Assembly: GCA_964187785.1 (NCBI GenBank)
Contig: OZ076409.1
Span: 56,296,001-56,360,000, forward strand
From: Amphiscolops sp. MND2022
Lineage: Eukaryota
Reading direction: 5' to 3'
Length of the DNA: 64,000 nt
Positions 22,501 to 64,000 of this stretch are shown here, piece after piece. The notes under the pieces were generated by a model. The model had not been told where the DNA came from and did not search any database. It saw nothing but the letters and a program-made list of their open reading frames with translations. The translations under genes were made by a program, and so were the position numbers. Each line of letters opens with the position of its first letter. Position 1 is the stretch's first letter.

Positions 22501-25500
22501 AATGAAGTTTTTAAACTTTTACACGCAGTAGCCTGAAAAAGATTTTGAAATTTCCAAAAGAATGTCAATCATATCTCTAGTTCTCTTGAACCTTCCATTC
22601 CAATCTTTTCTCATGTCAATATGGATGATTCTGAAGATATCACCCTTTAAAAAACCAGAAGTCAAAAACTTTCTGTATTAATTATTTCACCCTATGACAC
22701 TATAAACAAACCCCTCTATTACAGATAACTCTTATACACCTCAACTTCACTCTGTTCATTCCATTATAAAAAGTAAAACACAATTTAAAATATATCGTCC
22801 ATCTTGTCACAAAATGAACGCTTCTGGATATACATGTTTTCGTCGCCTCAATGCTCTCCAAAGTAACAAACCTCACTCTAAGTCTCTTACACCTACGTTC
22901 TAAAAATATAAATCTCGGGTCACCTCTAGTTGTAACAACTCGAAATTCAACTCCCGCTCTTTTCATTTTGACAGAAATAAATCTAGTTATGATCAATCTT
23001 TACAAAAATCCCAAAGGTTACAAACACCTGGAATACGTTCACGTTCATCATTTTACTATACTTCTCCACACAGTCTTTACAAACACCCTTCACGTTCTCG
23101 TGAACCATCAAATAGTTATAAGAACATACTCTGTAAAAGCGAAAAAATTGTAAACGCTTACTGTCAAAGTCAATCACATTCTGTCTTTTGTGATATTCTT
23201 CCCTCCATCTTAGATCAATGATCTCTTCGACAGAAAGATGTTTCTCATTCGATAACACTTTTTTTCAGTACTAGTATAATTTCCCACGAATTTGAACTGT
23301 CACATCACTATAAAAACTTGAACAGAACCCAACATATTCGAAATTCTGATAGCTTTTCTTTTAAAATCTCTCTGAATTTTTTTTGTAGACATGATTGTTT
23401 CCTGTCACAACTATCAATCTTCGTAGACAAGATTGCTTCTGTCATTTATTTTGCTACTTCTTCACCAAAACAAAATTTGAAAACAAGTAGCTCCAATACC
23501 GTTCTGATATTTAATTTCTTTCACACTTATACTTTCTTCTGACTCACGCTTGATCTCTTCACTACTCTTCTACTCTTCTCCACGAGGACATCTTCTGAAC
23601 ACTCAGATTCCAAGACTGCCTACCCATTTCTCACACAATCGTTGACTTCACCCATCAGTACATTTCTGTCCCTCATTGATTTGACTTCGATTCCACCTTT
23701 GATACAACCTTCTCCATTGTCATCCACATCTTCTGCAACACCCACTACCTCTGTGTCATCCACATCGACACCTGCCTTCACCCACCTTCCACATGTTCCA
23801 CCACAGATACCGTTGCCACCAATACTCGTCAGAACTATGTCCTTGTGTTCGCCAGTTGACAACACATCTCCAGACCCGCGAACCCCGTCATAAAAAACGG
23901 TATCAACTTGCTCCTGGTGAAGCTGGGTCGATCATCAAAAGAATCGTCCACACTGTTGTATATAAACGAAAACTGACTAGACCCTGTTTGAGAAAAAATG
24001 CGTTCCTTGCAAGGATCTTGCAAGATCCTTGTAAAAATGCAATTACTTGTAAGATCTTGCAAGGAAATTTGATTCTCGTCATCGATGCACTGAAGCATAA
24101 GGAACAATACTTAGACTCTCTCATTATTGATCAATTTTACGAAACTAAAGGCAATAGTTTTACTGAAATCTCTAATCAAAGTTTCCGTTTTGTGCTGACA
24201 ATATTTGGAAACCCCCTACAACAAAACTTTACTTTAAATGCGCCTCAAATCAAATCAAATCAAATCAATTCAACCCTCATTCTGCTTGAAATAACTACTC
24301 TAAATCTAATAAAAATAACTTGGCATGCTTTTCATCATTTTGTTCACCCTCCCTTTTTTTTCTAATCACCCTCTCTTGCAAATCATCATATCCGTCACTT
24401 CTTTTGATAAATCACTTAATTCCTTGCGGAATCTAATATATTCTCTGAACGATGTTGATTAGTACTCTCATACACTATGCTATATATTCATTATTGCTTA
24501 TCTGTACAATTTTTTATGTGCTTACATTTACAAGAGTATAATCTTTTCTCATAAAAGGTAAAATGTCCCAATATTCGGCTATCAAAACATTTTGACACTT
24601 GTTCCGATTTTCACTTTTACAAGATAATTTTTCATAATTTTTTTTTCATTTTCTTTCCCCTACCGTTGTAACCATCTTCACTTTTATATTTCACCCTCCT
24701 CATATTCTTTTAAGTCTCCTCACAGTTTAAAATGTTAAAACGTTCCTCCGTTTTTTGAACCCAAACCCAATTATTTTTACATTTTCGTCAATAGTTTCGG
24801 TTCTAATCCAAAGTTTCTCCAAATTTCAAATCTTCTAGTTTCACAAGAAACTTACTTACCTTACTCAATGATATTCATTTGAATGACTCCCCTCCGATTG
24901 TTCTTTTAAATTCTTCACTTTTGTAAAACGCGCCACTTGTTGAATTTTTTCAATGGATGTTGACTGATGATGACTTACGTTTCGAACAAAAACTTTGTCA
25001 TTTTACTAACGAAACGTTTTTAACCCTGCATTTCCGTTCATCTAGAATTAAGAAAACAAGGATTAATGCTAAGTTGACATGAAAACGAAGTCTCTTTATT
25101 CTTCCCTGAAAACGAAAGCCGCTCTTCACTCCAAAATTTAACTTTCTCCTACCAAGTTGGTCCTTTCTAAGTCACTTCAAATGTAAAAAGCCCCCGAATG
25201 AAACATGATGAAAGTATAGATGAAGATCAAACATGGTGGAAGACTTTTGAAATTGGAAATGCAATGCAAAGCTTCTAAGTTCTACCAAACGTTGAATTTG
25301 ACTCTAACATAACAAATTTTGTCCACTGTTAAATTCACCTCCGGATTTAGTAAACTTACCCTCCATGAAGCGAGTACTTTCCGCATAACTCTATGTTAGG
25401 AACGAAGGAATAAAAATTTGCAAAAATACACCTGAAAAAAACTTTGTAAAAAGATTACCTCTTGAATACACCAATTTAATAAAACCACTACCTCTATTCA

Positions 25501-25972
25501 AAACTTCTGAAGAGCCTCTATATCTTAAATCGAACTCCAAACTCATACCTAAATTCGAACTCTAATTCTATATTTTCCACAAACTTTCTGGTTCAACTCT
25601 TATGAATTTCTCCAAGTTGCTAGATAATTTCTCGTCTTTAAAACCCGGTCGGATCACATAACCATCTTAATGCTATGACATTATCATTAAACTTTTTTCA
25701 TTCACCTATTCACCAGACTGTAAAAGGTCCAGACTAATTATATGTGACTTGAATGTAAATGATATTGCTTCATCGATTCACCTTTGTATTCACAAGTTGA
25801 TTTGTATCTCGAACTGAACAGTCAATTCAATCTTCTCTTTAATTTGTTCTTCAATCTGTGCAGCTCTGCTAGCGTCTCGTTCTCTGTCTCAGTTTTCTAA
25901 ATTAAAGTCATTCTGATCTAAACCGAAACATCCGAAACATAACAACAGAACAAACAACTAAACATAAGTACT
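19567..25972 (-). mobile_element. Old, heavily degenerate LTR retrotransposon (probably Gypsy)
   Basis: Diverged direct repeats about 19567-19890 and 25665-25972 (shared CCAGACTGTAAA, GTGACTTGAATGTAAA, GAACTGAACAGTCAATTCA, GATCTAAACCGAA); TGG-start PBS candidate at plus 25647-25664; pyrimidine run at 19905-19929 as PPT; only weak protease/RNase H-like remnants on the minus strand. Confidence 0.6.
23975..24070. repeat. Short array of CTTGCAAG(G)AT motifs, likely DNA-transposon/MITE subterminal fragment
   Basis: CTTGCAAGGATCTTGCAAGATCCTTGTAA...CTTGTAAGATCTTGCAAG; similar style array at 63705-63830. Confidence 0.45.
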
Positions 25973-27869
25973 TTGGTGTTCGTTAAAGCTAATGTAGAAA
26001 ACTGACAATTACGTATGCTCCTGGTTTTTAATTTCCATCAATGATTATCAAAAATAACCTTTTTCCTCGTTTGTGTAGAAATATGAATTTAAAAAGGTAC
26101 TCTCCACATAGCTCAACTTAAATGTAACTAAACGCCCTGCAAAGGGATCATTTACAGACTGTAATTAAATGTTAGTAAAGGTACCTGTCTCAAGGACATT
26201 TAGAGTTCACAAAATTTTGTTCCTTTTCAATCTATATCACACTCTTATAAGTTTATAATTCATGCCCATAGAAATGGGCTGATAAATAATAAAAGTCGGA
26301 CTTACAGGCCAATAATATAAACAGGCTGATCCATATTTGAAATAAAACGATTCTTATTGTACATGCAGACACTTATAATATATAAAGGTTTCTTATATGA
26401 AGAATTCTTGTGTAAAGAATTCTTATTGTATTAGATTAGTTTGACTCCTAGAACACAACAATCCTTCTAATTGAAAAGTTAAAAATCGCTTGTCTGAAAC
26501 GACTGTTTCGTTTCAGGCTTTTTGCGGCCCTCCCGGTCAGCTTCAGTCAAACTATGGGTTTCACCGTTGCATTCAAGCAGTAATGAATAAGTATGGAAAA
26601 GACTGGTTGGACTCTTTTCATAATTTGATGTCATAACTTGGCGGCATGTTTCGCAATCCCAACTTTTTATTTTGCGCCCATTTTCCAAAAATATGTAAAT
26701 CAGACGTTTTTTTTGTTACCAAACAGGCAATTTTCCAAACTTATATCCAATATAAAGGGTTTCACCCATCGAAATCAAGTGATGTGATTTTTTTATGCTA
26801 TATGTTTTTGTAGAGCTTTTGGATCATTTTGGTTCACCCCAAAGACCCCAGAATGACCCAAAAACGAGAAAAGCTGCGAAAGTTTTCAATTTTTGAGAGT
26901 TTTAATGCAACTTTTGTCGAAAAAATGTGTTGCCAGGAGGCTTTTCTAAAGAAATAAACAAAGTTTTCATTTCAAAACAATTCAACATTGAAGGCGTCTA
27001 ATTTTTGGTGGTTTTGCAATCAATTTCTGAGGATATCGATGGATTAGAGGGTTCTAAACGTTCACGGAAGAAAGAATTAGCTATACAATACGCTTTTTTG
27101 ATGACAAAGAAGCAGTGTTTTAATTCAAAAGCACGTTAGAAAGAATCCAAATGAGAAAAAAACTCTGATGAATTTTGTTTTTATTCAAGTTCATCATGTA
27201 ATTTTTGTAACCTTTCTGAACTTTTTGTAAATAGAAAGTTGAAAGTGTTCAGAAGTGAATAAATGGTTCTCAAGTAGGTTTTTTGAGATAACCGCATTCT
27301 TATGTCAGAAAGTCCTTCGACTTAGCCCCAAAATGTCAAAAATATCACACTTGACACTTCCTCAGCTTTTATGCAAACTTGGATGAAATTTGGTAATTTA
27401 TTTCGTTATTTAGGCTCCAAACGATGTGTCTAGCCAGGCAGTAGGCATTTCATAGGAAACTTGGCAGTTTTCTAGGAAAAACAGTACCAGAAAAACAGCA
27501 AGAAATTTTAATTTTGCAAAGGTTGTGAAGTTGTCGAAAAATTTAGTGTTTTAGAATAAAAGATATCCAACAACGAACAAACGCGGTATCAAGGGGTTTT
27601 TTTGCAACAAATGCAGTTTTTTGTAACAAAAGTAACTGGAAATTGTCCCAATTTAAACGAAAATATCCAATATTACTAATTTCTGATGAAATCATTGATT
27701 TTTCCTTCAAACATAGATTACGTTGGTGAGTTGAAAGATTCGAAATGATCCAGACATTACAACTTTGTTCGCTGCATGCTTTTCAAATGGAAGGTAAAAA
27801 CACCTCACAATAACCCAATAAATTAAAAAAACTTTTTTGACGTTAATAAACAGCTTATTTGTAACACGT

Positions 27870-37755: not shown

Positions 37756-38039
37756 TTGGAAAATCATTTCCCTAAAACACTTTCAAAGGTTTGTCTAGAA
37801 ACTGAGCTTGGGTGGATTACATAAAAATGCATAATAAACGTTTTCGGAAATTCCAATTACAGTCAATATTAAAGAGCTTTGATCTGTTCAAAAATGGCAG
37901 GCATGTATGTGTTTTCGCCTGATACGAGTTGTCACTTGATATGAGTTGTCGCTATGCCGTGAATTTTAACCATGTGTTTGACGAAGTTAGAAATATAACG
38001 ACAAAAATGAGAAACATCCCCCTGTCTGTCTGCCGGTAG

Positions 38040-38138
38040 GCCAATCTGCCCAAAGCTGACCTGGCCTCAGATTACCACCTGAACTATTACTCAGGCAAAT
38101 CTATTCACGTGGCATTGACAAAACACGGATTTTGTCAG
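38040..38138 (+). CDS. Exon 6 of methyltransferase copy B
   Basis: TAG|GCC...CAG|GT; ANLPKADLASDYHLNYYSGKSIHVALTKHGFCQ; open, mostly synonymous differences from copy A. Confidence 0.85.
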
Positions 38139-38329
38139 GTTAACTTTCAATTAAATGATGCCTAACATCATGTCTTACTTACTCTTTCATGTACCGATCG
38201 TCAAGGCACTTGGAAATCCCAATAAGTTATGATTCTCATATTCAGATTTTTGTAGCAATAATACAAAAATGTAACAATAATTTTCAAAAACAAGTCATTG
38301 AAACAATTTCTAAATTCAAAATTTGCTAT

Positions 38330-41300
38330 TGTCATAAATGACTCATCAAACTACTATTTGAACTAACTGAAAAACGTTGTCTTCTAAATGCATGATTCAC
38401 TGGATTACCTAATACTGATGAGAAAAGACTGAAGATATCCCGGTTTCATTGACATCTTTTCTAACAAATGGCGCTCCTGGGAAAAAAAAGAACTTTATTG
38501 GAACCTTTACCCTTGCTGCATTAAAGAGAGTGCTTGGGTAGTTTTTTAAATCTTTTTTCGCAGCTTTCCGCGACAAAAAGGCTGAACATTTGTGTTTTTG
38601 TTTCTTTAGCTTAGTACATCAGGTCTCTGATTAGAGGAGATACAGTTTCAAGTGGTTCTCTCAGAAAGGAAACTTCTAAAATCAACAAACTCAGACTTCT
38701 CTAGGCAAGGAGGTTTACTCGAAGTTTTTTTTGGGTGTAAAGTCAACCTTGTAGATGGTCATATTCTCAAAAGTTCGGTAGAAACCAAAAACGTTGTGTC
38801 CGTCGCCGGTATCTCTACCATTGCATTCACAGCTGGTTTTTTAGGTCTAGGTGCGTCCTGATCCGTCCAGATCTCCATTTCGTTTTCCGGCTCTCGCTAG
38901 CGTCTTGGTTTTCGATCTACGTTTCGCGCGCTTCGTTTCTGTTCCGCGCACTAAAAAATCTACCGCTCCGGGATCTTTTTTTCTCAGACTCGACAGTGTG
39001 TTCGCCTTTCACGCATCTACGAACGGATAAAGCGAAATTCGTGTGCTGTTTTCAATCTACCACTAACCACAGAACAACGAAGATGGCCAACCTGAAAAAT
39101 CAGACCCTGCAGAATCAGTTCAAGCTGCACGACATCAAATTCACGAACTCATCCAACTATTTAGCATTTCAACTGGATCTCAATGGTACCCCAATGCAGC
39201 TGAATGAGATACTTGCAGCACTCAAAACAGTTGCTTCCAAACTTGAAAACCTTGCTGACAGCTCACATGACTCTTGATTACTTAGAGCCATACTTGCAGA
39301 AATCACCTGACGCATCAATCCTTGTCCTTCATTACGCAGACAAAATAAGATCTCGACAAACACAAAGAAACAATGTTTCCCTCAGAAGCCATCTTCCAGA
39401 CTCAGTTACGGGATCTCACCGCCACTTTGAAGAAGAAACGACATTCTCGATGTGACTGCCGCAAAACCTTGGTGTTACTTACAACAATATACTGACCGTA
39501 GTAACTTATGTGCTTGTGTACCTCCTTTTGAATCTTCCAACATACAAATGACTGATACTACTCAAGTAAGTCGAATCCAACCCGAGGAGTTCAAATTCGA
39601 CGAAGACCAAGGAACATTCATTCTGCCGCCCACGGAACAACAAACCATTCTCCCCGCAAACCTAACACAATCGCCACAACTCTATACAACAGCTAACCCA
39701 TACTACAACAGAGGTCACATCGCCTACAATAACAACTTCTTCAGTGTTTGCCATCAACTGTACCGTGCCAGCAACGCCGACAACGCAGAACCATTCTCTT
39801 CATCAAGGCCCGGATGCCCATCAACGCTTCCCACTAGAGCAATCAAACATTATCTCATCACAACCTATCATTTTAGCGCCATTCGTCCAACAGTTTCCAA
39901 CTCTCCACAACGTAGTGGGATGTGTTTTCCATCAAACACAGATTGCTCAAGCTTGTCTCAACTCCGCCAACCGCCCAACTGCTCCGTCTCCATATATCCC
40001 GGCTACTGCTTCGCTTGCTTTTCCTGTACAACCGAACCCAAACATATATACTACCGCTCAACCAGTATCACAGTCTGAAATGCAAAAATCACACTGGCGC
40101 TCCCATCCACCTCGGCAGTTTGTGAGTAATACATGCATCAAACTACCGCCAATCCGAACACCCAAATTCGATGGTGATCCACTTGCTTTCCACGATTGCA
40201 TTAATATCTTCAAGGCCTCCGTTAACGAAAACACTTCCATATCCCAAACACATCGATTTATTTATCTGCTGAACTCAGTCTGTGGAAAGGCTAAAGACCT
40301 TATTCGAGGTTATTCTTGTAATCCTGCATATTACATATTTGCCTTGGTTGAACTAGAATCTTGTTTTGGATCTCCACAACACATCGTCACTGCATACATA
40401 CACCGCCTTGAAAACTGTGCCCTCATCTCATCCCAGAACCCCCATACACTTGTTTCCTTCTTCACATTCCTGAAACAACTCGTCCAAACATTCATTATCC
40501 TCCGATTCACCGCGGATCTTCAATCGTCAACACTACTCACTATTGCTGAAGAGCAACATCCGCATAACTTCCTTCTCAAATGGACAGAACACACTGTCAA
40601 GAACAGCATTCTCTTCGCGAGTTTGCTTTGTATTCAGCAATGGCTGGAGATTCAAGCCAGAGTTCTTCAAACTGTTGAACCGAACCTCCCTCGACCAAGT
40701 AAACCATCATTCCCGCTCTCGGGATCATCGTCTCCTTCGCAAAACACCCAAAAGAAACAAATTGAATGTCCGCTCGGTCACCAACATCATTCGTCCACAA
40801 AGTCTCGGTTCCTCCATCCAAGATCGAACACAGCATGTTCAACGTTTGCATCACTGTTTCAACTGCCTCGGTCAGAGCCATTTGAAAAAAACTGCCATCA
40901 TCCAACCGCTGTTTCAAACCCAATCGCGGTCCACACCTTTGATTCCGAGACGCTACAACGTGAAAAAGACTTATCCGGACAAGCCACAACCTGCTCCGGC
41001 ATCCACGCAAACTACTGAAATCCGATCAAACGCCACAAATGCTGCAAAAGCAATTCACCAGAAAGGTTCTTCTAACAACTCTCGCCAACATCAGTTCAAC
41101 CCCTCACAGTTCATTGCTACTGCAAGTGTTGACCCAGGGAAGAAAAAGAAAACGCCTTTTGACCTCCTTCAAGTGATTCCTGTGTCTCTGCTCAATGGAG
41201 ACTAAGTTTTTGACACTTATGCCTAGATCGACCCTGGAAGCACACGAACATACGTCCTCGATAGCATCAGTCACTCTCTCGATTTAGAAACTGGACACGC

Positions 41301-44300
41301 ATTTGATTTAGATGTTCAGTTCATGAACTTGTCTCGTTCCTTTTCCGTCTGCCCCACAGCATCCAAAAATGCCCCCTACGTCGAAATGAATCACAATTCG
41401 AAGTCAAAAACGCCTATACAACCACTTGCTTCAACCTTCCCCCCGGCAAATATATCCGAACTGAATGGCATCTGCCAATCGAACTCAATGCTCCGCCACA
41501 TCAAATGCTCCGACATTGACAAAGGACGCATTGGCGTCCTTCTTGGAACATCGTGCGTACAGTTTACACACGCTTTAGAAAAGATCCGAAGATCCCCAAC
41601 CGACCTGATGGTCTCCACACTGAAGTCAGATGGACCACCGCCGGTGAGTTCATGCATCGGAAACGAGCAAAATCGTCCTTTAGAAAAAATTTCGTCTTTT
41701 TCGCCGCAACCGAAATCCACCAAAACGATGCCGATCGGATTCCACCTGACATGCTTGAACAATACTGGCCAGTTGAAAAAACCGTCAGTGAACCCACCGA
41801 ATCCTTCGTTTTCTCCGATGTCGACAAAGAAGCAATCCAAATACTTAAAAAAACGTGTCGCCACAACGGCCTACCGTGGAAAACTGACGATCACCTATCG
41901 AACAATTACTACCCGCCCTCAACCGTGTCCGTTCCCTCGAAAAACGTTTGATTCGCAATTGAACTAAAGAAAAGGTTCGACGAAACTGTTACCATTGATC
42001 TTGAGAAACACTACGTTAAGCCCGTTATAATGCTGAATCCGCGGCCTGAAAAAATTTGGTACTTACAGTAGAAAACCCTAACAAACCCGGCAAAGTCCGT
42101 CGCGTAGCAAATGCTGCCTCGAAGTACAAAAATGAATTTTTGAACTCCAATATTCTCGCAGGACCTGATCTTCTTGCAAACCTGCTTGAACTCATCCTCC
42201 GTTCCCCTGAACACGCCGTTGGTGTTCAGCCAATCTTGAAGCAATGTTCATGCAAATCGCAATCCACCCTGAAGATCAATCAGCCCTCTGCGTCCTTAAG
42301 ATGTCCGATAACCATGTACTCCAATAACAAAACACCCGCCTCATCTTTGGTGCCAACCGCTCGCTTCGCGCCTTATTTGTACTCCGTCGTTGCGCTCAAG
42401 ATCTTGCTTCCCAATTCCCTGACGTAATGCAAGCCGTGCTTAACAATTTTCATAAGGATGATTTCATCCAATCCTTTTCAACCCCAGCTGTCGCCCGCCG
42501 ATTGACAAAAGATCTACTTACCGTCCTCCAGCGTGGAGATTTCCGTCTTACAAAGTTCATCTCCAACAACAGTGATGCCCTGTCTTTCATTCCCGCCCAA
42601 GACCGTGTGAAATCTGCATCCGAAACAAAGGTTTTAGGTCAAACGTGGTGTCTTCGCACTGACTCATATACCGAACCGCCACCAAAGTCCGTTAATAATC
42701 CAACAGCACTCAGACAACGTTTCAGCCTGGTTTCATCAATATTCGACACGATCAATTTACTAATCCCGTTAGTGATCCAATTCAAGATAATTCTTCAATC
42801 TCTCTGGAAACTTGGGACCATGCTATTCCCGCTCACATTCAAACCTCCGTGAATAAACTCACTGATTGTTACCGCGCAATGCCGACCGTCTCCGTACCTA
42901 GCCGTGCTTTCCGATCAGCCACAACCGTGGAACTCCACAACTTCACAGACGTATCCAATTCCGCTTTCACCGCTGTCATTTATGCTCGCCATCCAACTTT
43001 TTCGCAAACCTCAGCTCAACAAGTCTTCGTCATCGGAAAGCACCGTGTCTCCCCGATTAAACAAAAAAGCATTCCAGAACTGGAACTTGAAGCCGCGGTC
43101 CTTGCAGTCCGTCTGCTCCGAATAGTCCGTAACGCATTTTCTTGCGCCTTCCCAGTTGTGAAGTTGTGGACCGCTACTTGTGTCGATTTGTACTGGATAC
43201 AGCGACGGAACAAACTTAAGAGTTTTGTCGCCCAAAAAGTCAATGAAATTACTCTACATTCTGACCCGCTCGACTGCAAATATGTTCCAACCAAACAAAG
43301 CCCTGCAGATCACGGTACCTGTGATCTCACCCCCAACGAAAGTTCCGCCAAATGAATCAAAGGTCCATCCTCTCTCAATGAATCGCGCGAATATTGGCCC
43401 AAACGAACATGTAAAGCCATCGTTATTCATCAAAAGTCAGTCTCTTTGACACTCAACGTTTCTCCACCTGGAGCAATCTACTAAAAGTCGCCGCCAACGT
43501 TTTCCGTTTCGTCCGTCGCCTGCGTTCACCGACTTCACCTTCAACACTGACCTCTGAAGACTTTCGCAAAGCCAATCATGCGCTTATCAAGCAATCTCAA
43601 TACCTCTCGTTTGCCTAAACTTTTGATCAACTGCGTCGAAACTTGAATCCGACCTCGCGCGACAAACTCATACCTTTCCGACCGTTCATCGATCAAGGTT
43701 CACTCTTGCGCTCTCATGGCCGCCTCGTATACTTGCCACTCGCAAGAACTTTGACCTGAACTACAAGCCTCTCTGAACGATGGGATTGCCGCTCTTCAGA
43801 AGAGAATTCCTCACGCTGAAGAAATCGTTGGGATTTTCATCCTCGTTCTGCGCTTCATTTTGGTGGTCACTTGGAAAGGGGAATCCAGACAGCAAAAAGA
43901 ACACTTCTGATTATCCTCGCATCTCAATAACTGAAGCTCGATTTTTTTCACGAAAATATTAATTGAAACCGAGCTGATGTTGAACTCGCGACCACTCACC
44001 CATGTCAACGACCAACCAGAAAACGAAGATCCTCTATCACCAAACCACTTCCTTCTAGACCGCCCATTCGCAAACTTACCACCCATTGTTTTTGAAGAAA
44101 GGTAAACCGCTGTCTTTCAATTCCTTGAAAAAAGTTCAAAAAGTTTCCAATCTTTTTTGGAAACGATTCTTGAAGGAGTGCTTGCCAACTTTGGATCGAC
44201 GACAGAACAAAGGAACGCCCTGTCTCAAAGTCAACGATATATCTTGGTTGCTGCAAGATTTCACTCCTCGAGGCATTTGGCCACTGTGAAAAATAACCGC

Positions 44301-57889: not shown

Positions 57890-59457
57890 TTAAGGAATTT
57901 TTTACTGGAAACTATTGTCAAAAAAGACGCACAGTTCCGAAAAATTACGAGAGTCGGTCTTTCAGCCTATGCTTTATTGTCACGCACTTTGTAATTTAGG
58001 TCAAGTGACGTTGGAACGAACTAGCTGGTTATAGAAAAATTTATAGAAATGTGTCAGTTCCCTGGTCTTGAGAAAAACCCGACTATAGTCTGCATTTTCT
58101 ACGAATGCGCCTACTAAAACTACTGCTAGTAAGCGTTTATGTATTTTTTGCAAGTAAAAATGTAGCTAAAACACTGCTAGTAAGTGTCAATGTATGTTAA
58201 GTATATTTTTGGCATTTTAATGGAAATGTGAAGGTTTTAAAGAACGGAGAATTTGTAAACGCTCGTTTGATTCATGTCGAGAAACGGTCTCTTTGAGCTG
58301 CTAAGATAGTTAGGAACGAAAAAAGACAGCGCTGTTAAAAAGAAACGGAACCTTGGAATTATTCATGCCAAATATCAATACAAATTGGTCAGTAACAACT
58401 CAAAATCGCCTTTTTGAAAACACAACAGTTTTCGTGAACATTTCCCTGGTTTTTACAATTTTGTGCTTGAAAACATCACATACAACCTTTTTTCCGGAAA
58501 CAACTTTTGCGAACAGTTTGATAAAGTTTAAAGATGATACTCTAATAAAAATTAAGATGAGGTTTTCAACGCGTCAGATCAAAGCATCTGATGTTTTAAA
58601 TGCTCGAATTTTTTTGCTTTTTAAAAAAACTTCCAGATGTTTGTCAATTGTTCCAGCTACAGAAGTTTGAGCTCCTTTAATTAGACAAGGAGAAATAAGA
58701 TTTTTGGAGAATCGATTTATTCTACATAAACTAAGATTAAGTGTAAACGTAATTTTTCAAAGTTAAACTTCTCTAGTATCTGTTTTTGGAGAAAACTGAA
58801 ACTTTTTGAGAGTGAGCAGTAGATGATGAGCATCTTTCAGTTATTTTTAAACCAAGTATTGCATCTATACAAGCACTTGAAATTTCAAAAATCGAGTCAT
58901 CAAATCAAACTCCTAGTTAAACACATGTGAAAATTGAAAATTGAGTTACATTGGTGATAGAAATTCCAAAGATACGTTATTGTAATTTCATGTTTTTCGT
59001 TTTTGATATAAATCTTTCCTCAATAAAAATTTATACCTTCTTTGAAAAGCGTACTCATATGTATAAAGATGAGAAACAAAATCGACGACATATTTTTTGA
59101 ATTTTAAATGATTTTCATGATATTCATTAGCCGTTGATTGTACCTTTAAACTGCCAGTTAGGTTTGATGAATTTTCGAAGTTTTTCTGTACCCAGCACAT
59201 TTGCTTTTCAAATTAACTTCTAGAAGAACGTCTCAACATCTAGCTCTCTAATTCTATAGCGAAATAATAACAAGGTTTAAACCTTGTTGTGACACAGAAA
59301 AACAAAAATGATAATGAATAAATAGTAAAATTCAAAATTAGTCATATCAGGAAATGCATATTGTCTTTTCATTTTCGCGAATATAGCACCTTTCAGTTGC
59401 GGAAACTCAAAAGTTCACATTTTGTATTAAAAACTCAAAATTAGCGGTGGCGTGGCG

Positions 59458-60118
59458 CTACACGTAAGACTCTCTGTTAGGGTCACCGATGGGGGGACTG
59501 GGAATGTAGTTAGACGTTGTGGGGGAAACTCGGTCGGGGGGCAACTGCCAGAAGTTGTCCGGGTGGGGCAATGACCCTGGAGCCCCCGGAGGTGGGCCAG
59601 GGGATCTGATGAACTCCTCCTCGTCCCGGATGCTCTCATCTGTGACTGACTTGCTACTGCTTCCGGCTGCTGCAAAGGCCTGTGCCGCTGCTTTCTTGAT
59701 CTCAATTGTCTCTCCGAAAATCACAGCCGCACTGTTAGATGCATTAGAAATGGGGCTGCTGCGATGAGTCATAGCCACGGCGTTATCCCGGAGGTCTTTC
59801 TCGAATCCAAAGTTCTCGGGGATGGCGTGCCCGCTGTGGCCATTGGAATTGTAATGCCGGTAAGGACTGTCTAGAGTGTTGACGTGTCCGAGTGACTTGC
59901 GACCTCCATTCATGTGAATATGATTGGTTCCCGAAAGCGGGAGTTTTTCGGGTGTCATTGCGTTGTTCGTTTGCGAAGGTAGCAAAGCGTGATTAACTCC
60001 GTCGTCGTAAGCATTTCGTTTGAGCAGTCGGGCGTCACCCACAACATGGGGTTTCATCTCGCCGGCACTGAAGAACATCTTCCACGCGTCTCTAGCTTCG
60101 CGGAGGAGCATGCAACGA
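59458..60118 (-). CDS. Terminal exon of an adhesion/secretin-family (7tm_2) GPCR: end of TM7, helix 8, long cytoplasmic tail
   Basis: Pyrimidine tract plus CTCAG acceptor; RCMLLREARDAWKMFFS matches the (H)C+L...VR..W pattern after TM7; about 220 codons open to TAG; GC-richer than flanks. Confidence 0.75.
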
Positions 60119-60434
60119 CTGAGCAAAAACAGGATTGACCAAATAAAGATTGCAATTCATTAGACTCCAAAATGAATTCATCGTTTTGAGAACCTTATGG
60201 ATCCATTGGTAAAATTTTCATAGTTTTGTTGTTACTGAAAGATCGTATTTAACTTCGAAATAGTCAAAAAAATTTTAGAATCCCTTCCAGAGTTAAATCT
60301 AAGACAACTGGCGTTCCAAGCCTATTTTCAATGAAATCATTATTTAAAGGGACGGAAGTGAAAAAGAACTATTGAGAGAAAAAATTGAAAATGGTAATTG
60401 CAGTCAAGAATTTTTGGTAAATATTTGGTCATTC

Positions 60435-60785
60435 CTGGTGAAGAAACACCAGCTTTGGAACACATTGCCACAGCAGAAGACAAACTCGAATGTGGGCAGC
60501 GATTGTCTGAAGAAGAACTGGGCGTATATCCAGGTGAGGGAGAAGGAGACTAAAACGAGAGTCATGATCAGTAGGTTCATCCGGGTGGACTGGATGAAGG
60601 AGTTCTGGTGCGACTGCTGGAACTGCTGCATCTGCTGGCTCTGGAACTTGTTGTGTTCGTTCGACTGAGTCTGGACCAGCTTCAAAGCTATCAGGTGAAA
60701 GCCCACGCCCACGATAACGATCACAGAGCAAGGCAACACCAGACCTCCGTAGTACGTTGTCTCTAGCTCAGGAGTCAGTCGACAG
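60435..60785 (-). CDS. GPCR exon encoding ECL2 end, TM5, ICL3, TM6 and most of TM7
   Basis: TTCCAG acceptor, phase 2; CRL...YYGGLVLPCSVIVIVGVGFHLIALKL, LLIMTLVLVSFSLTWIYAQFF, FEFVFCCGNVFQSWCFFT fit CWL / LTW.F / F..N..QG motifs of family B2 GPCRs; donor is either TG|GT at 60449 or AG|GA at 60434. Confidence 0.75.
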
Positions 60786-61185
60786 CTGGAACAAAAACAA
60801 CTCACAATGAGAGCCAAACTTTGAGATTGTTAAAGAAATTGTTGAAGCAATGAATCTTGATACCTTTTGATTGATCAAGTTGACAGGACCAGTAATTTTT
60901 AGCTTTCACTTTTCATGTCAAGTTTTGAAAACGATCAAGATATGTTCCTCAAAATGTCCAGTACATAACAACTCAAATAAACGTTTTATATTCCGTTGCC
61001 AATGAAAATAGAGTGAATGAGTCGAATTTGATTCAACTTTTTAGCAAAATATCAAAAGTTATGGTTACTTCGATTTTGATATTTTTATAGGACGCATATT
61101 CAGCCAGGAAAAAACGAGGCAGAAAACGCAACCCACATTTATGAGCCAATAAAATCTCAAGCATGTGTTCTCTTTGAGCTATCAA

Positions 61186-61624
61186 CTGGGGTGTGGAACC
61201 GTACGGGTTGAATTGAAATTACGGTTTACGGGTTATCGTCTACGGTTTACGGTTTCAGGGTACAGTTTGAAAAACACTTTTGCTTCAGAAGTATTTAAAT
61301 TTCTTCATCAAAAATCTTTGTTATGGTGTTATCAAAGCACTCATGTTTCTTGCCCCAAAATAGCATTTGAGGGAACGCCCTCTGCAAATTATAGCGTAAA
61401 AATAGAATATTTTGAACGAATTCGTCTTTTAAAGACGTTCTTATTTGAGAATGAACAATTGAATTCGCCCCAAAATTTTCATAGAAACACTGCTGTTAAA
61501 TGTATAAAACAATTCGCTCGTATTTCTCCAAAGTGTACGGTTCGCTTTTTTCACAACTACGGTTTGCGGGTTACGGTTTGGCACTACGGGCCTCGGTCCA
61601 CGGTCTAAAAATCCCACACCCCAA
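61186..61624. mobile_element. MITE / non-autonomous DNA transposon (hAT-like)
   Basis: TIRs CTGGGGTGTGG / CCACACCCCAA; TSD GCTATCAA (8 bp; 9 bp AGCTATCAA also fits); subterminal TACGGTTT repeats at both ends. Confidence 0.85.
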
Positions 61625-61981
61625 GCTATCAAGTATGGAGGCTCATCATTGTTAACATCGGAAAAACTCTAGTCTCAGCAGAGTCGCTCCTTGATAACAT
61701 TTCGTTGATTCATTATCCATCGCAAGAACATCTCAGATAAAAAAATTTGCTATTTTGAGCTTTAAGGTATAAACTTTGTGATAGGTAACAGGTAAATGAA
61801 GCATCATCGACTTACTATATATCCCTTATATCGTAGTTTCCTTGTTTGATAATGATGGTCGGAGTTGTAATAATTAGAGGCATACCTGAAATGAAAACAA
61901 TATTATGCTTTTCATGTTTTTTTTTCAGTAATGCAACATGTACAATCTACGAAAATACAGTCCCCTACGGCTTAAAGTCAC

Positions 61982-62154: not shown

Positions 62155-63704
62155 CTGCACTGAATAAACGCAACGATCCAGCGACGGTCCAAAGTCGACG
62201 CCGGAAAATTCCAAAAACAAGAGGTGAGTACAATAAAGGGGTTTGGCTTTACTGCTATAGTGGGTCGTACAATATTGTTATGTAGGAGAAACATCGCGAC
62301 AGTCGGGCTTTTTTCATAAGCGTCGAGACAAAGCGAGAAGATCCATAAATTGGTTTAGTGCTTCGTTGACGCCGCAAAGCTACGTCAGTCATTTCACGCT
62401 TTTGCACCCAATAAGGTGTTTTTGTCTGCAGTTTGTACGGATGAATCAACACGACAAAGGTCGAACATGATTTTTAATTTAAAAAAACACGGTTAAGTAA
62501 AAAAAAACGAGACACGTTATTCCATGTGAAATCATTTCTGGGAAGTGAAGTGCCAGAACATAATTGAAAAAATTTTGGGAACACTGGCGTTTTAAATGAC
62601 GTTGAATTGTTCAGATGATATGTTCAATAACATAATTTGAAACCCGATTTTCAGAGTTTGAAAATAACATTTGAAAACTTTTCTGGCAAAGTTGGTCCAA
62701 AGTTTGTGGAAATTTCCAAGGTTAACCCTGGCAACAATGCCAAATGTTTTGTATTAAAAATTCATGGAACTTTAGAAAAGAGTTTATGCTTCAAAGGAGA
62801 AGTTTTATTTAAAATTGCTTTTCAAAATTCTCAAGATTTCTTTGTAAGTTCAATGTTTTTGCTGCATGTGCTTCAAGTAATTCAGTTTTCCCAAGCTCCC
62901 AATTTTATTGTTTAAAACCTTCAATCGCTTGCTGTTGAAAAAATAATTCAAGCTCAATTGAATGAACTCAATAGAAAGTAATTTACATTGAAAATTGTAC
63001 AAAAAAACATTGTCATCAAAAATGTAGGTTGTTCTTTTTTGGAAGTTGCTCTCTTAAGCAAATACTTTTCGCTATCTTTCTCTAGGATTGTGCAACACAA
63101 GCTTGTTTATTTTTGGTTCAGCGCAAGTTTATGCGATTCTGACCACTGAGATGAGAACAAAGTCACAGCGATACGAAGGCATATGGTTGATTTTTCTTGA
63201 AAGGAAAAAAATGACTCATTCACATTTTAGGTGAAAAGCAAGATTCTGACTGTAGTAGGCAAAAAATACACAATTTTCACAAAGTATGTACAAACAATTT
63301 GTACGATTTTGTTAGAACAAGCTTTATTTGTCAATAACTCTTACAAGATTCTTAAAACATTTGCATACCACAGATGAGAATGATGAAGACAATACAGAAT
63401 TTTTTACAAAAATCTTTCAAAAGTTGCGTCGTTCGACGATAAGATTTTTTAGATAAATTGTCGCTACAGCCTATCAATAAAAAGTAATATGAAAGCTGAA
63501 ATAGCTATAGATTGTTCTATTTCTTGGTAATAAAAATAATAGAGATTAATAAGAGAGAAAAGAGAAAAGAATTTCTATTTGTATCTCGTCAACTAATCTA
63601 TCCGGTCTGAAAACTAATGTATCAAATGATTGCGTATCACTAGAAACATGAATACTATGTTTACCAACAACATCTATGGCACAGCCCAGTGATCGAAGAC
63701 ATGG

Positions 63705-63830
63705 AACGCTTGCCAAGAACCATGGTAAATCCCTAGCTAGCCTTGCCAAGATCTTGCCAAGGATACCATGATTATGCAAGATCGTGCCAAGCGTACCATG
63801 TTTTACCATGTTCTTGACAAGGGTTCCATG
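63705..63830. repeat. Short array of CCAAG/CCATG motifs, likely DNA-transposon subterminal region
   Basis: CTTGCCAAGAACCATG, CTTGCCAAGATCTTGCCAAGGATACCATG, CGTGCCAAGCGTACCATG. Confidence 0.45.
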
Positions 63831-64000
63831 GTAGCAAATCCGTTTTTTTTTGGTAACTCTTTTCTAATTCTCTCTATATTTATTGCACTAGTTTCTATTG
63901 CATTCTCGAACTTTCAGTAGCAAGATTTACAAATCATAGCCAGAAAAGTTTGTTTTCACACCGATATCGCAAACCCGCAAGTTGTAATAACTTGATTCGA

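What the first reader, a model, noticed from the sequence alone, without database searches (positions are those of the whole stretch)
60119..60455. GPCR TM7 is only full length if a GA donor (AG|GAATG) is used
Seen: splicing at ACCAG|GAATGAC (intron 60434-60119) gives FQSWCFFTSRCMLL, placing Cys nine residues after Gln as in the family pattern [10 protein letters not shown]. The only in-phase GT donor (TG|GTGTTT, 60449) deletes five TM7 residues, and no other AG acceptor lies before the upstream in-frame stop. Established: GA donors are very rare but common in a few lineages (the copepod Eurytemora affinis, dinoflagellates). Inference: this organism may use GA-AG introns, which would break standard gene prediction.
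Basis: partly seen in the sequence, partly recalled or inferred. Interest (0 to 1): 0.72.

Follow-up and report, generated by a model that had tools for sequence, protein, structure and literature searches.

The report
Transposon-like GA-AG intron in a GPCR gene
A 316-base insert with matching inverted ends splits the last membrane helix of a receptor gene, and only its removal as an intron starting with GA instead of the near-universal GT gives the protein that all related genomes encode; the same end motif sits at other odd introns of this genome, so standard gene finders would mis-model these genes.

Summary
On the minus strand, exon 60785-60435 (TM5 to mid-TM7) and the last exon 60118-59458 join in frame as ...FQSWCFFT|SRCMLLREARDAWK only if 60434-60119 is removed as a GA...AG intron.

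- Three related genomes (L007, L062, L063/L064) and two paralogues read straight through this site with no intron and the same TM7 length.
- An RNA contig from a close relative carries the joined form.
- The downstream exon is under very strong purifying selection (omega about 0.014).
- A DNA run reproduces the GA with no differences.

The intron looks like an insertion. Its ends are a 16-nt inverted repeat (15/16; 0 of 20,000 shuffles match this). The repeat's first three bases, CAG, are the last three bases of the exon, so the donor dinucleotide is repeat positions 4-5. The same 16-mer starts other exon-splitting inserts, including GA-AG in a glutamate-receptor gene and GC-AG in another 7tm_2 gene.

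The other four introns of this gene that I located are canonical, and the U1 snRNA copies examined are mostly canonical.

Limits: there is no RNA from this species, the transposon superfamily is unproven, and the organism is unidentified. The scan has noted similar non-GT introns elsewhere in this genome.

The parts
61816..61885 (-). 70-nt exon (end of TM4 / ECL2: ..GMPLIITTPTIIIKQGNYDIRDIY), acceptor TTCAG|, donor |GTAAGT
   Evidence: Sequence. Conserved in L007. The 255-nt loose end of RNA contig X2 record 6 beyond 60785 starts with this exon's last 30 nt, 29/30 identical.
60786..61815 (-). Canonical GT-AG intron (GTAAGT...TCCAG)
   Evidence: The junction 61816|60785 is seen in a relative's RNA contig. 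An intron is present at this site in L007 and L063.
60435..60785 (-). Exon coding TM5, loop 3, TM6 and the first part of TM7, ending ...TTCTTCAC-CAG
   Evidence: Translation. RNA contigs of a relative cover it, and X1 record 4 ends exactly at 60435. Omega is 0.038 against L007.
60119..60434 (-). 316-nt GA...AG intron (GAATGACC...TTTTTGCTCAG), absent from the orthologous site in three related genomes
   Evidence: No RNA contig depth falls inside it. It is single copy in its own genome apart from its ends.
60422..60437 (-). 5' arm of the terminal inverted repeat, CAGGAATGACCAAATA. Its first 3 nt (CAG, 60437-60435) are the last 3 nt of the exon, and the donor GA is repeat positions 4-5.
   Evidence: I1, 94% complementary. 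None of 20,000 shuffles reach this. The 16-mer recurs 46 times at up to 1 mismatch against 3 for the reversed control.
60130..60145 (-). 3' arm of the inverted repeat, TATTTGGTCAATCCTG
   Evidence: the only two matches at up to 2 mismatches in 104 kb. It pairs with the 5' arm in the MFE and centroid RNA folds.
60122..60129 (-). 8-nt spacer TTTTTGCT between the repeat end and the acceptor CAG. Possibly a decayed copy of the target-site duplication; it now forms part of the polypyrimidine tract.
   Evidence: Element of 308 nt plus 8 equals the intron length of 316. It matches the left 8-mer at 4/8 only. The same 'repeat end + 8 nt + CAG' spacing is seen in L036 and L044.
60438..60445 (-). Exonic 8-mer TTCTTCAC directly before the repeat (putative left target-site copy)
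   Evidence: It is conserved as TTCTTCAC in all intron-less relatives.
60119..60121 (-). Acceptor CAG
   Evidence: It is the only AG downstream of the in-frame stop at 60159-60157.
59458..60118 (-). Last exon: rest of TM7, helix 8 (RCMLLREARDAWKMFF) and cytoplasmic tail ending DPNRESYV, plus the stop codon
   Evidence: Omega is 0.014 against L007. Of the 14 changes assigned to the window's own branch across both exons, all are synonymous, and 10 of them lie in this exon. RNA contigs of a relative cover 59459-60121.
60449..60450 (-). Rival in-phase donor TG|GTGTTT, with exon end at 60450 and the GT itself at 60449-60448. It would delete five TM7 residues.
   Evidence: Its product FQSCRCMLL is not matched by any orthologue or paralogue.

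Best explanation
Window 60434-60119 (minus strand) is a spliceosomal intron with a GA donor and an AG acceptor. It arose in this lineage when a short, transposon-like element bounded by inverted repeats inserted into the TM7 codons of a class-B (7tm_2) GPCR gene.

The element begins CAGGAATGACC. Its own first three bases, CAG, now serve as the last three bases of the exon, and the intron starts at repeat position 4. The donor dinucleotide is therefore whatever the repeat carries at positions 4-5, which is GA here and GC in a variant of the repeat.

The intron ends at a host CAG that lies 8 nt past the other repeat arm. Removal therefore restores the ancestral reading frame exactly (...FFT|SRCMLL...).

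What is shown:
- the sequence itself;
- absence of the insert from orthologous sites in related genomes;
- the inverted repeat at the intron ends;
- conservation of the joined product;
- purifying selection on the downstream exon;
- recurrence of the end motif at other exon-splitting inserts.

What is inferred:
- that the spliceosome of this animal accepts A at intron position +2. The 12 U1 snRNA copies examined mostly keep the canonical 5' end, and none could pair with a +2 A. Recognition would then rest on the exonic CAG, G+1, A+3 and G+5;
- that pairing of the two repeat arms may help by bringing the splice sites together.
For: 1. Exact collinearity with intron-less orthologues.
- L007 aligns to window 60805-60435 and 60120-59304 with the 316 nt missing.
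- L062, L063 and L064 read TGGTGTTTCTTCACAAGCCGNTGCATG at this site.
- Their ORFs P0002, P0005 and P0007 read QSWCFFTSRCMLL.
- L007 and L063 keep the neighbouring canonical introns, so they are genomic loci and not cDNA copies.

2. Paralogues and solved structures.
- Paralogues P0003 and L006 have the same TM7 length.
- A profile of these proteins aligns gap-free through TM7 to ADGRG2 and ADGRD1.

3. RNA from a relative.
- Seawater metatranscriptome contigs, 90-95% alike, cover only the exons.
- X1 record 3 runs 59971-60121 and continues with 17 letters that equal the end of the upstream exon. That is the joined form 60435|60118.

4. Selection.
- For the downstream exon dN is 0.023, dS about 1.7 and omega 0.014.
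- Among the listed differences, 14 synonymous and 0 non-synonymous changes fall on the window's own branch.

5. DNA confirmation.
- The DNA contig shows GA with no variant, at diploid depth.

6. Insertion signature.
- The terminal inverted repeat is 15/16. None of 20,000 shuffles reach 1 mismatch or fewer.
- Element of 308 nt plus 8 equals the intron length of 316.

7. The same 16-mer starts other exon-splitting inserts.
- L010 is a Lig_chan gene with GA-AG, and the Pfam model positions run 3-66 then 70-104 across the join.
- L046 is a 7tm_2 gene with GC-AG, and the model positions run 25-88 then 90-126.
- L036 (MFS), L041 (DUF2053), L044, L022, L026 and L049 keep open frames across the join.

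8. The donor matches published GA donors.
- It has the features Robertson reports for copepod GA/GG donors: obligate exonic AG and A at +3 (PMC5714493).
Against: - No RNA of this species could be laid, so use of the GA site here is inferred and not seen.
- The relative whose RNA shows the joined form may simply lack the intron, as three other relatives do. The bridging contig has only 20 letters on the upstream side, below the tool's own 31-letter rule.
- The putative target-site duplication is poor, at 4/8.
- The interior of the intron has no other copy in the genome, and copies of the 16-mer share nothing beyond it. This is unlike a typical young MITE family.
- No transposase was found.
- About a third of the 46 motif hits are internal parts of unrelated repeats.
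- The overall RNA fold is not unusually stable (z = -1.1).
Confidence: 0.8

Rival explanations
1. The spliceosome uses the nearest in-phase GT (exon end 60450, TG|GTGTTT) with the same acceptor. This would give a receptor whose TM7 is five residues shorter (FQSCRCMLL), possibly as one of two isoforms.
For: The donor is GT, in phase, and keeps the downstream frame open. All the other introns of this gene that I located use GT. The U1 snRNA copies examined are mostly canonical.
Against: - The site is weak: T at -2, and T at +4 and +5.
- No orthologue or paralogue lacks these five residues.
- Solved adhesion GPCRs align without a gap here.
- The relative's RNA contains the five codons.
- Other inserts with the same end motif have no such GT rescue yet interrupt conserved domains.
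Confidence: 0.08
2. The insert is not spliced. The gene is an insertional null or a truncated allele ending ...FFTRNDQIFTKNS*, and the intact downstream exon only reflects a very recent insertion.
For: Read-through meets a stop after 12 codons. There is no RNA from this species.
Against: - The downstream exon is fully open, with omega 0.014.
- Only synonymous changes fall on the window's own branch.
- The insert appears homozygous.
- It is not young. Its putative target duplication has decayed, its repeat arms differ at one position, and it has no similar copy in the genome.
Confidence: 0.06
3. The intron is ancestral and was lost precisely in the three relatives and in the paralogues. The inverted repeat is a structural feature of an old intron and not a transposon footprint.
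For: Intron positions differ a great deal among these relatives. L062 has introns in loop 3 and in the tail, and L063 lacks the TM1/TM2 intron. Intron turnover in both directions is therefore plausible.
Against: - It would require at least three exact losses, or one deep loss plus retention only here.
- Own-genome and foreign paralogues also lack the intron.
- The 16-nt end motif is shared with introns of unrelated genes.
- The 308 + 8 = 316 arithmetic fits an insertion.
Confidence: 0.05
4. Excision depends on the terminal helix rather than on normal 5' splice-site recognition. This would be structure-guided removal, as in the non-conventional introns of euglenids.
For: The two arms pair in the MFE and centroid folds. 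Several other members also have paired ends. A review describes such introns with CAG/CTG pairing near their ends (PMC11282704).
Against: The intron has an ordinary exonic CAG|G, a polypyrimidine tract, a CAG acceptor and a CTAAT branch-like site. In other members the 3' arms are decayed by 3-6 of 16 positions, yet the frames stay open. This is an animal genome with normal GT-AG introns.
Confidence: 0.05

Closest known systems
GA and GG 5' donor introns of the copepod Eurytemora affinis (Robertson 2017, PMC5714493)
   Same: - GA donors are needed for full-length conserved receptors, including ionotropic glutamate receptors.
- Exonic AG is obligate and +3 is A.
- The introns are lineage-specific and apparently recent.
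- U1 snRNA keeps its canonical 5' end.
- Automatic gene models break at these introns.

   Different: Robertson reports no inverted repeats or transposon origin, and notes that no nearby consensus sequence was noticed. Here the donor lies inside a 16-nt repeat arm that recurs at other introns. The organism here is unidentified. With a genome of about 1.07 Gb, and earlier scan notes calling it acoel-like, it is probably not Eurytemora. This was not tested.
Introner elements: non-autonomous DNA transposons that create introns (Micromonas, Aureococcus, dinoflagellates, some copepods; Gozashti 2022 PMC9860276; PMC12130899; review PMC11282704)
   Same: A short element with terminal inverted repeats inserts into an exon. 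It brings one splice site with it and takes the other from host or duplicated sequence, and it is removed exactly.
   Different: Classical introner families have many near-identical copies and clear target duplications. Here only the 16-nt ends are shared, the interior is unique and the duplication is degenerate. The acceptor AG is a host CAG beyond the 8-nt spacer and is not inside the duplication. The donor is GA.
MITE-derived non-canonical introns of the tunicate Fritillaria borealis (Henriet 2019, as summarised in PMC11282704; PMC13326754)
   Same: Species-specific non-GT introns with inverted repeats and target duplications coexist with conserved GT-AG introns at old positions.
   Different: In Fritillaria the borders are mostly AG-AC or AG-AT and such introns are the majority. 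Here the 3' end is a normal AG, only position +2 deviates, and the other four introns of this gene that I located are canonical.
GA donor of vertebrate FGFR1-3 genes (Brackenridge 2003, cited in PMC5714493)
   Same: A GA 5' splice site is used by the major spliceosome.
   Different: That is a single conserved, alternatively spliced site that depends on a nearby element. It is not a recurrent insertion-derived class.

Membership tests
Major-spliceosome intron with non-canonical GA donor (GA-AG) | Removal restores a reading frame collinear with intron-less homologues | tested here: met
   The product FFT|SRCMLL is identical in length and nearly identical in sequence to three orthologues and two paralogues.
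Major-spliceosome intron with non-canonical GA donor (GA-AG) | Exonic AG before the donor, G at +1 and A at +3 (features of the published GA/GG donors), plus a pyrimidine tract and AG acceptor | tested here: met
   One search shows CAG|GAATGA ... CCTGTTTTTGCTCAG|T. The criteria come from PMC5714493.
Major-spliceosome intron with non-canonical GA donor (GA-AG) | Spliced junction observed in RNA of the same organism | not testable with these tools
   The only RNA runs found are seawater metatranscriptomes of a relative that is 90-95% alike. They show the joined form with 20 letters on one side. Runs X4-X7 hold the intron and are DNA.
U12-type (minor) intron | Donor /RTATCCTT | tested here: not met
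   The donor is GAATGACC.
Transposon-derived intron (introner / MITE-like) | Terminal inverted repeats at the intron ends | tested here: met
   16 nt, 15/16 complementary. None of 20,000 shuffles reach 1 mismatch or fewer.
Transposon-derived intron (introner / MITE-like) | Absent from the orthologous site in relatives (gain by insertion) | tested here: met
   L007, L062 and L063/L064 lack it. The direction, gain or loss, rests on parsimony.
Transposon-derived intron (introner / MITE-like) | Target-site duplication flanking the element | tested here: inconclusive
   - TTCTTCAC against TTTTTGCT matches at 4/8.
- Other copies match at 3/8, 5/8 and 6/8 (L036, L044, L043) and at about 2/8 in four more.
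- The spacing 'repeat end + 8 nt + CAG' recurs in L036 and L044.
Transposon-derived intron (introner / MITE-like) | Many copies of similar sequence in the genome | tested here: inconclusive
   The interior has only a self-match. The 16-nt end motif gives 46 matches against 3 for the control, but about a third lie inside other repeats and the copies share nothing beyond the motif.
hAT superfamily | 8-bp target duplication, YARNG repeat ends, hAT transposase in autonomous copies | tested here: inconclusive
   An 8-nt spacer is present but degenerate. The end CAGGA fits YARNG at 4 of 5 positions. No transposase ORF lies next to any of 40 motif copies.
Class-B GPCR (Pfam 7tm_2), adhesion type | 7tm_2 profile match over the transmembrane core | tested here: met
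   - The TM2-3 exon L002:2146-2601(-) scores 24.7 bits against a cut-off of 20.6.
- The TM1 exon scores 16.9 bits.
- The orthologue's N-terminal ORF in L063 scores 38.7 bits.
- The TM5-7 exon alone gives no Pfam hit.
Class-B GPCR (Pfam 7tm_2), adhesion type | GAIN/GPS autoproteolysis domain before TM1; closest to adhesion subfamily | not tested
   There is only a weak profile match of TM6-TM7-H8 to ADGRG2 (E = 0.049), ADGRD1 and ADGRL2. The N-terminal exons lie beyond the window and were not modelled.

The most novel reading that the evidence does not exclude
This animal, possibly an acoel according to earlier scan notes (not tested here), carries a class of mobile elements whose inverted-repeat end CAG|GNATGACC... 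acts directly as a 5' splice site. Exon insertions survive as introns, the repeat sequence dictates GA, GC or GG donors, and the paired repeat arms compensate for the weak +2 position. That would give a mechanistic origin for the unexplained 'obligate exonic AG plus GA/GG' donors seen in a copepod. It would also show a relaxed +2 rule in a new animal lineage whose U1 snRNA copies are mostly canonical.
Probability: 0.35. Interest if true: 0.75.

Novelty: new member of a known kind. Interest (0 to 1): 0.6.

Why it matters
**Gene annotation.** Any gene finder or RNA aligner that insists on GT or GC donors will truncate or split this receptor. It will do the same to the glutamate-receptor, transporter and other genes that carry the same kind of intron. 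Annotation of this genome needs G-only donor rules.

**Biology.** The locus is a clean natural example of intron birth.
- The empty site is preserved in three relatives.
- The insert still shows its inverted ends.
- The donor dinucleotide can be read off the repeat.

This links two literatures, transposon-made introns and lineages that tolerate GA/GG donors. It also offers a testable reason why such donors always follow an exonic AG.

Tried and rejected
- **Pfam on the later exons.** The TM5-7 exon, the tail exon, P0002, P0003 and P0005 gave no 7tm_2 hit. The GPCR identity rests on the upstream exons and a weak PDB profile match.
- **Copies of the intron interior in its own genome.** Only the intron itself was found.
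- **Target-site duplication.** It is weak at this locus and across nine copies, about 40% identity against roughly 28% expected. I do not claim it.
- **Transposase ORFs next to 40 motif copies.** None were found. The CAGGAATCACCAAATA subgroup lies inside an unrelated repeat with conserved flanks on both sides. One copy (L014) carries what looks, read by eye, like a reverse-transcriptase-type YADD motif; it was not checked against Pfam.
- **U1 snRNA variant able to pair with +2 A.** The 12 best copies were inspected. Seven have ATACTTACCTG. Five differ at other positions (L056, L057, L058, L060, L061), and none could pair with a +2 A.
- **Metagenome scan with the 20-nt exon end.** It returned four chance matches with unrelated flanks.
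- **Paper search for the sample and assembly identifiers of the relatives.** Nothing relevant came up. A paper search linking acoels with introners or non-canonical splicing also found nothing.
- **My guess that the tail intron of L062 also starts CAG|GA.** This was wrong: it is GCTG|GTATGA, a canonical donor.
- **The TM1/TM2 intron of this gene.** It is absent from L063, but it has a GT donor and no terminal inverted repeat.
- **Organism identity.** I did not resolve it.
- **Same-species RNA.** None was available. The single run search and the single read-laying run were used.

Full report
**What is in the sequence**

The gene lies on the minus strand.
- Exon 60785-60435 translates as CRLTPELETTYYGGLVLPCSVIVIVGVGFHLIAL...MNLLIMTLVLVSFSLTWIYAQFFF...FEFVFCCGNVFQSWCFFT.
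- The last exon, 60118-59458, translates as RCMLLREARDAWKMFF...DPNRESYV*.
- Between them lie 316 nt that start GAATGACC and end TTTTTGCTCAG.

I enumerated every in-phase donor/acceptor pair.
- Joining 60435 to 60118 gives FQSWCFFTSRCMLL.
- In-phase GT donors exist at exon ends 60450, 60462 and 60486. They delete 5, 9 and 17 residues respectively.
- An in-frame TGA at 60159-60157, with no AG between it and 60119, fixes the acceptor.

A DNA contig of run X4 (2,103 nt, depth 86) matches 58941-61043 without a single difference. Neighbouring allelic contigs have depths of 38-46. The GA is therefore real and the insert looks homozygous.

**Is it a GPCR?**

- The TM5-7 exon alone gets no Pfam hit.
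- A whole-genome scan with 7tm_2 hits the same strand 5.6 kb upstream, at window-equivalent coordinates 66362-66610.
- The two upstream ORFs score 24.7 bits (above the cut-off) and 16.9 bits for 7tm_2.
- A profile of the orthologue and two paralogues finds adhesion GPCRs as its best solved relatives: ADGRG2 at E = 0.049, then ADGRD1 and ADGRL2.
- That alignment runs through TM6, TM7 and helix 8 without any gap. tfdfvfCfanvtqsWlffsekCiLLseareaWkr aligns with [34 protein letters not shown].

**Other introns of the gene**

The other four introns that I located are canonical.
- The intron before the TM1 exon ends TTTCAG.
- The TM1/TM2 intron runs GTTAGT...TTAG.
- The intron after the TM2-TM4a exon starts GTGAGT and ends TTCAG at 61886.
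- Intron 61815-60786 runs GTAAGT...TCCAG.

**Comparative evidence for the GA junction**

An exhaustive protein search with the exon found P0002, which is 304 aa and 89% identical. It reads ...FQSWCFFTSRCMLLREARDAWK....

P0002 is one uninterrupted ORF on a 27.7-kb metagenome contig.
- At the DNA level, L007 aligns to window 60805-60435 and to 60120-59304, with exactly the 316 nt missing.
- L007 keeps the upstream intron and the 70-nt exon about 1.9 kb further up. It is therefore the orthologous genomic locus and not a cDNA copy.

A second search added P0005 and P0007.
- Their loci, L063/L064 and L062, also read TGGTGTTTCTTCACAAGCCGNTGCATG straight through.
- L063 has short introns at the gene's canonical intron positions, so it too is genomic.

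The own-genome paralogue (L006) and a foreign paralogue (P0003) have the same TM7 length.

In total, five independent intron-less sequences give the product that only the GA donor gives here.

**RNA**

The one run search found no RNA of this species. It found three seawater metatranscriptome runs from one sample and four DNA-like runs of the source organism.

Laid at 90% likeness, the RNA contigs are 90-95% alike, with differences mostly at third codon positions. They therefore come from a close relative.
- They cover 59459-60121 and 60435-60785, with no depth in 60158-60379.
- X1 record 3 (168 nt, mRNA sense) lies on 60121-59971. It begins with 17 further letters, AGCTGGTGTTTCTTCAC, which are exactly the upstream exon at 60454-60438.
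- With the ambiguous CAG, this is the joined form 60435|60118.
- It has 20 letters on that side, fewer than the tool's 31-letter rule. A 17-letter exact match is nevertheless not chance.
- X2 record 6 runs beyond 60785 into letters that match the end of exon 61885-61816 at 29 of 30 positions, so these contigs are spliced mRNA.

The caveat is that the relative might lack the intron. This shows the mature message, not GA splicing as such.

**Selection**

- Against L007, the upstream exon has omega 0.038.
- The downstream exon has dN 0.023, dS about 1.7 (saturated) and omega 0.014.
- I polarised the 40 listed window-versus-RNA differences with L007. This put 14 synonymous and 0 non-synonymous changes on the window's own branch, 10 of them in the downstream exon. 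The tool did not list a further 42 differences.
- The tail is therefore still being translated in this lineage. That argues against an unspliced null allele, unless the insertion is very recent.
- The decayed flank and the lack of similar copies argue that it is not recent.

**What the intron is**

Its ends are inverted repeats: CAGGAATGACCAAATA at 60437-60422 and TATTTGGTCAATCCTG at 60145-60130, complementary at 15 of 16 positions.
- None of 20,000 shuffles of the intron give a terminal pair with 1 mismatch or fewer.
- These are the only two matches at up to 2 mismatches in 104 kb.

The repeat starts three bases inside the exon. The exon's final CAG therefore belongs to the repeat, and the donor GA is repeat positions 4-5.
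- The repeat-bounded unit is 308 nt.
- Adding the 8-nt spacer before the acceptor CAG gives 316, the intron length.
- This is what an insertion with an 8-bp target duplication next to a host CAG would give.
- Splicing from the repeat's CAG to the host's CAG then restores the original message.
- The duplication itself is poor: TTCTTCAC against TTTTTGCT, 4 of 8.

**The same end motif elsewhere**

The 16-mer occurs 46 times at up to 1 mismatch, against 3 for the reversed control. I fetched 40 of these copies.
- About a third sit inside unrelated repeats.
- A dozen have an exon-like left flank, GC-rich with an open frame running up to the CAG, and an AT-rich right flank.
- Most of that dozen have a partner arm 280-1,577 nt downstream.
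- Most also have an AG a few bases past the partner arm that keeps the frame open.

Individual cases:
- **L010:** the exact 16-mer follows a Lig_chan exon covering Pfam model positions 3-66. A degenerate arm and TGCAG precede an exon that starts at model position 70. The product is ...SVAS-R-VIVNAWGMF..YTANLASF. This is a second GA-AG intron.
- **L046:** CAG|GCATGACCAAATA splits another 7tm_2 gene between model positions 88 and 90. This is a GC-AG intron.
- **L036 (MFS) and L044:** both repeat the spacing 'arm end + 8 nt + CAG'.

Features that do not fit a simple transposon family:
- The copies share nothing beyond the 16 nt.
- The interior of this intron is unique in the genome.
- No transposase was found.

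I therefore call it transposon-like and leave the superfamily open.

**How it is probably spliced**

- Of the 12 best U1 snRNA genes, seven keep the canonical 5' end ATACTTACCTG. Five differ at other positions, and none has a change that could pair with A at +2.
- The donor CAG|GAAUGA can pair with U1 at -3 to +1, at +3 and at +5.
- It has the two features Robertson found obligate or near-obligate in copepod GA/GG donors, exonic AG and +3 A. U1 was canonical there as well.
- The 3' end has a normal pyrimidine tract, a CAG and a CTAAT about 40 nt upstream.
- The two arms pair in the MFE and centroid folds, which would bring the 5' site next to the branch region. The whole fold is no more stable than shuffles (z = -1.1), so a role for the helix is only a possibility.

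**Comparison with what is known**

- Transposon-made introns with inverted repeats are established in algae, dinoflagellates, tunicates and some copepods. Some of them have non-canonical borders.
- GA/GG donors at about 12% of introns are published for one copepod.
- This locus is a well-documented new case of that kind. Its particular geometry is that the donor lies inside the repeat and the acceptor is a host CAG beyond the spacer.
- Earlier notes of this scan report GG, GA and GC donors and repeat-ended introns elsewhere in the same genome, and they call the animal acoel-like. I used them as leads only. The repeat family described here was worked out independently. I did not test the organism's identity.

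**Verdict**

- My confidence that 60434-60119 is removed as a GA-AG intron is about 0.8.
- My confidence that it arose by insertion of a repeat-ended element is about 0.75.
- My confidence that the element is a hAT is below 0.5.

Noticed in passing
G000:C2:44492265-44496265 (L010): An ionotropic glutamate receptor (Lig_chan) gene is split by a roughly 1.46-kb GA-AG intron that starts with the identical 16-mer CAG|GAATGACCAAATA. The Pfam model positions continue from 66 to 70 across the join.
   Followed up: partly
G000:C10:16625227-16629227 (L046): A second 7tm_2 receptor gene carries a GC-AG intron, 775 nt by my coordinates. It starts with the variant CAG|GCATGACCAAATA and has a partner arm TGTTTGGTGATGCCTG 17 nt before the acceptor.
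   Followed up: partly
L036, L041, L044, L022, L026, L049 (own genome): Further exon-flanked copies of the same end motif occur in an MFS transporter, a DUF2053 protein and unnamed ORFs. All keep an open frame across a GA-AG or GC-AG join. No copy with T at repeat position 5 (a GT donor) appeared among the hits at up to 1 mismatch.
   Followed up: partly
window 63685-64000: The right end of the window belongs to a dispersed repeat with at least 50 copies at 72-94% identity on many chromosomes.
   Followed up: no
window 20001-26000 and 38001-44000: These stretches show strong negative GC skew, -0.29 to -0.48 in the first and -0.22 to -0.29 in the second. GC rises to 0.47 in the second stretch. 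The cause was not examined.
   Followed up: no
L056, L057, L058, L060, L061 (own-genome U1 snRNA copies): Some U1 copies have altered 5' ends: ATATTTAAACCTGG, ATTCTTACCTGG, ATACTTACTTGG and ATACTTACCTTG. None would pair with a GA donor. Whether they are expressed variants or pseudogenes is unknown.
   Followed up: no
L062 6001-6726; L063 45-1737; L002 2590-2765: Intron positions in this gene differ among close relatives. L062 has introns in loop 3 and in the tail that the window lacks. L063 lacks the window's TM1/TM2 intron and has very short introns of about 70-90 nt. This points to fast intron turnover in the group.
   Followed up: partly
window 60435 (RNA contig X1 record 4): One RNA contig of the relative ends exactly at the last base of the exon, and the junction-spanning contig has lower depth (2.5) than both flanking exon contigs (6.4-6.9). 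This could be a graph branch at the junction, for example spliced and unspliced forms, or it could be chance.
   Followed up: no
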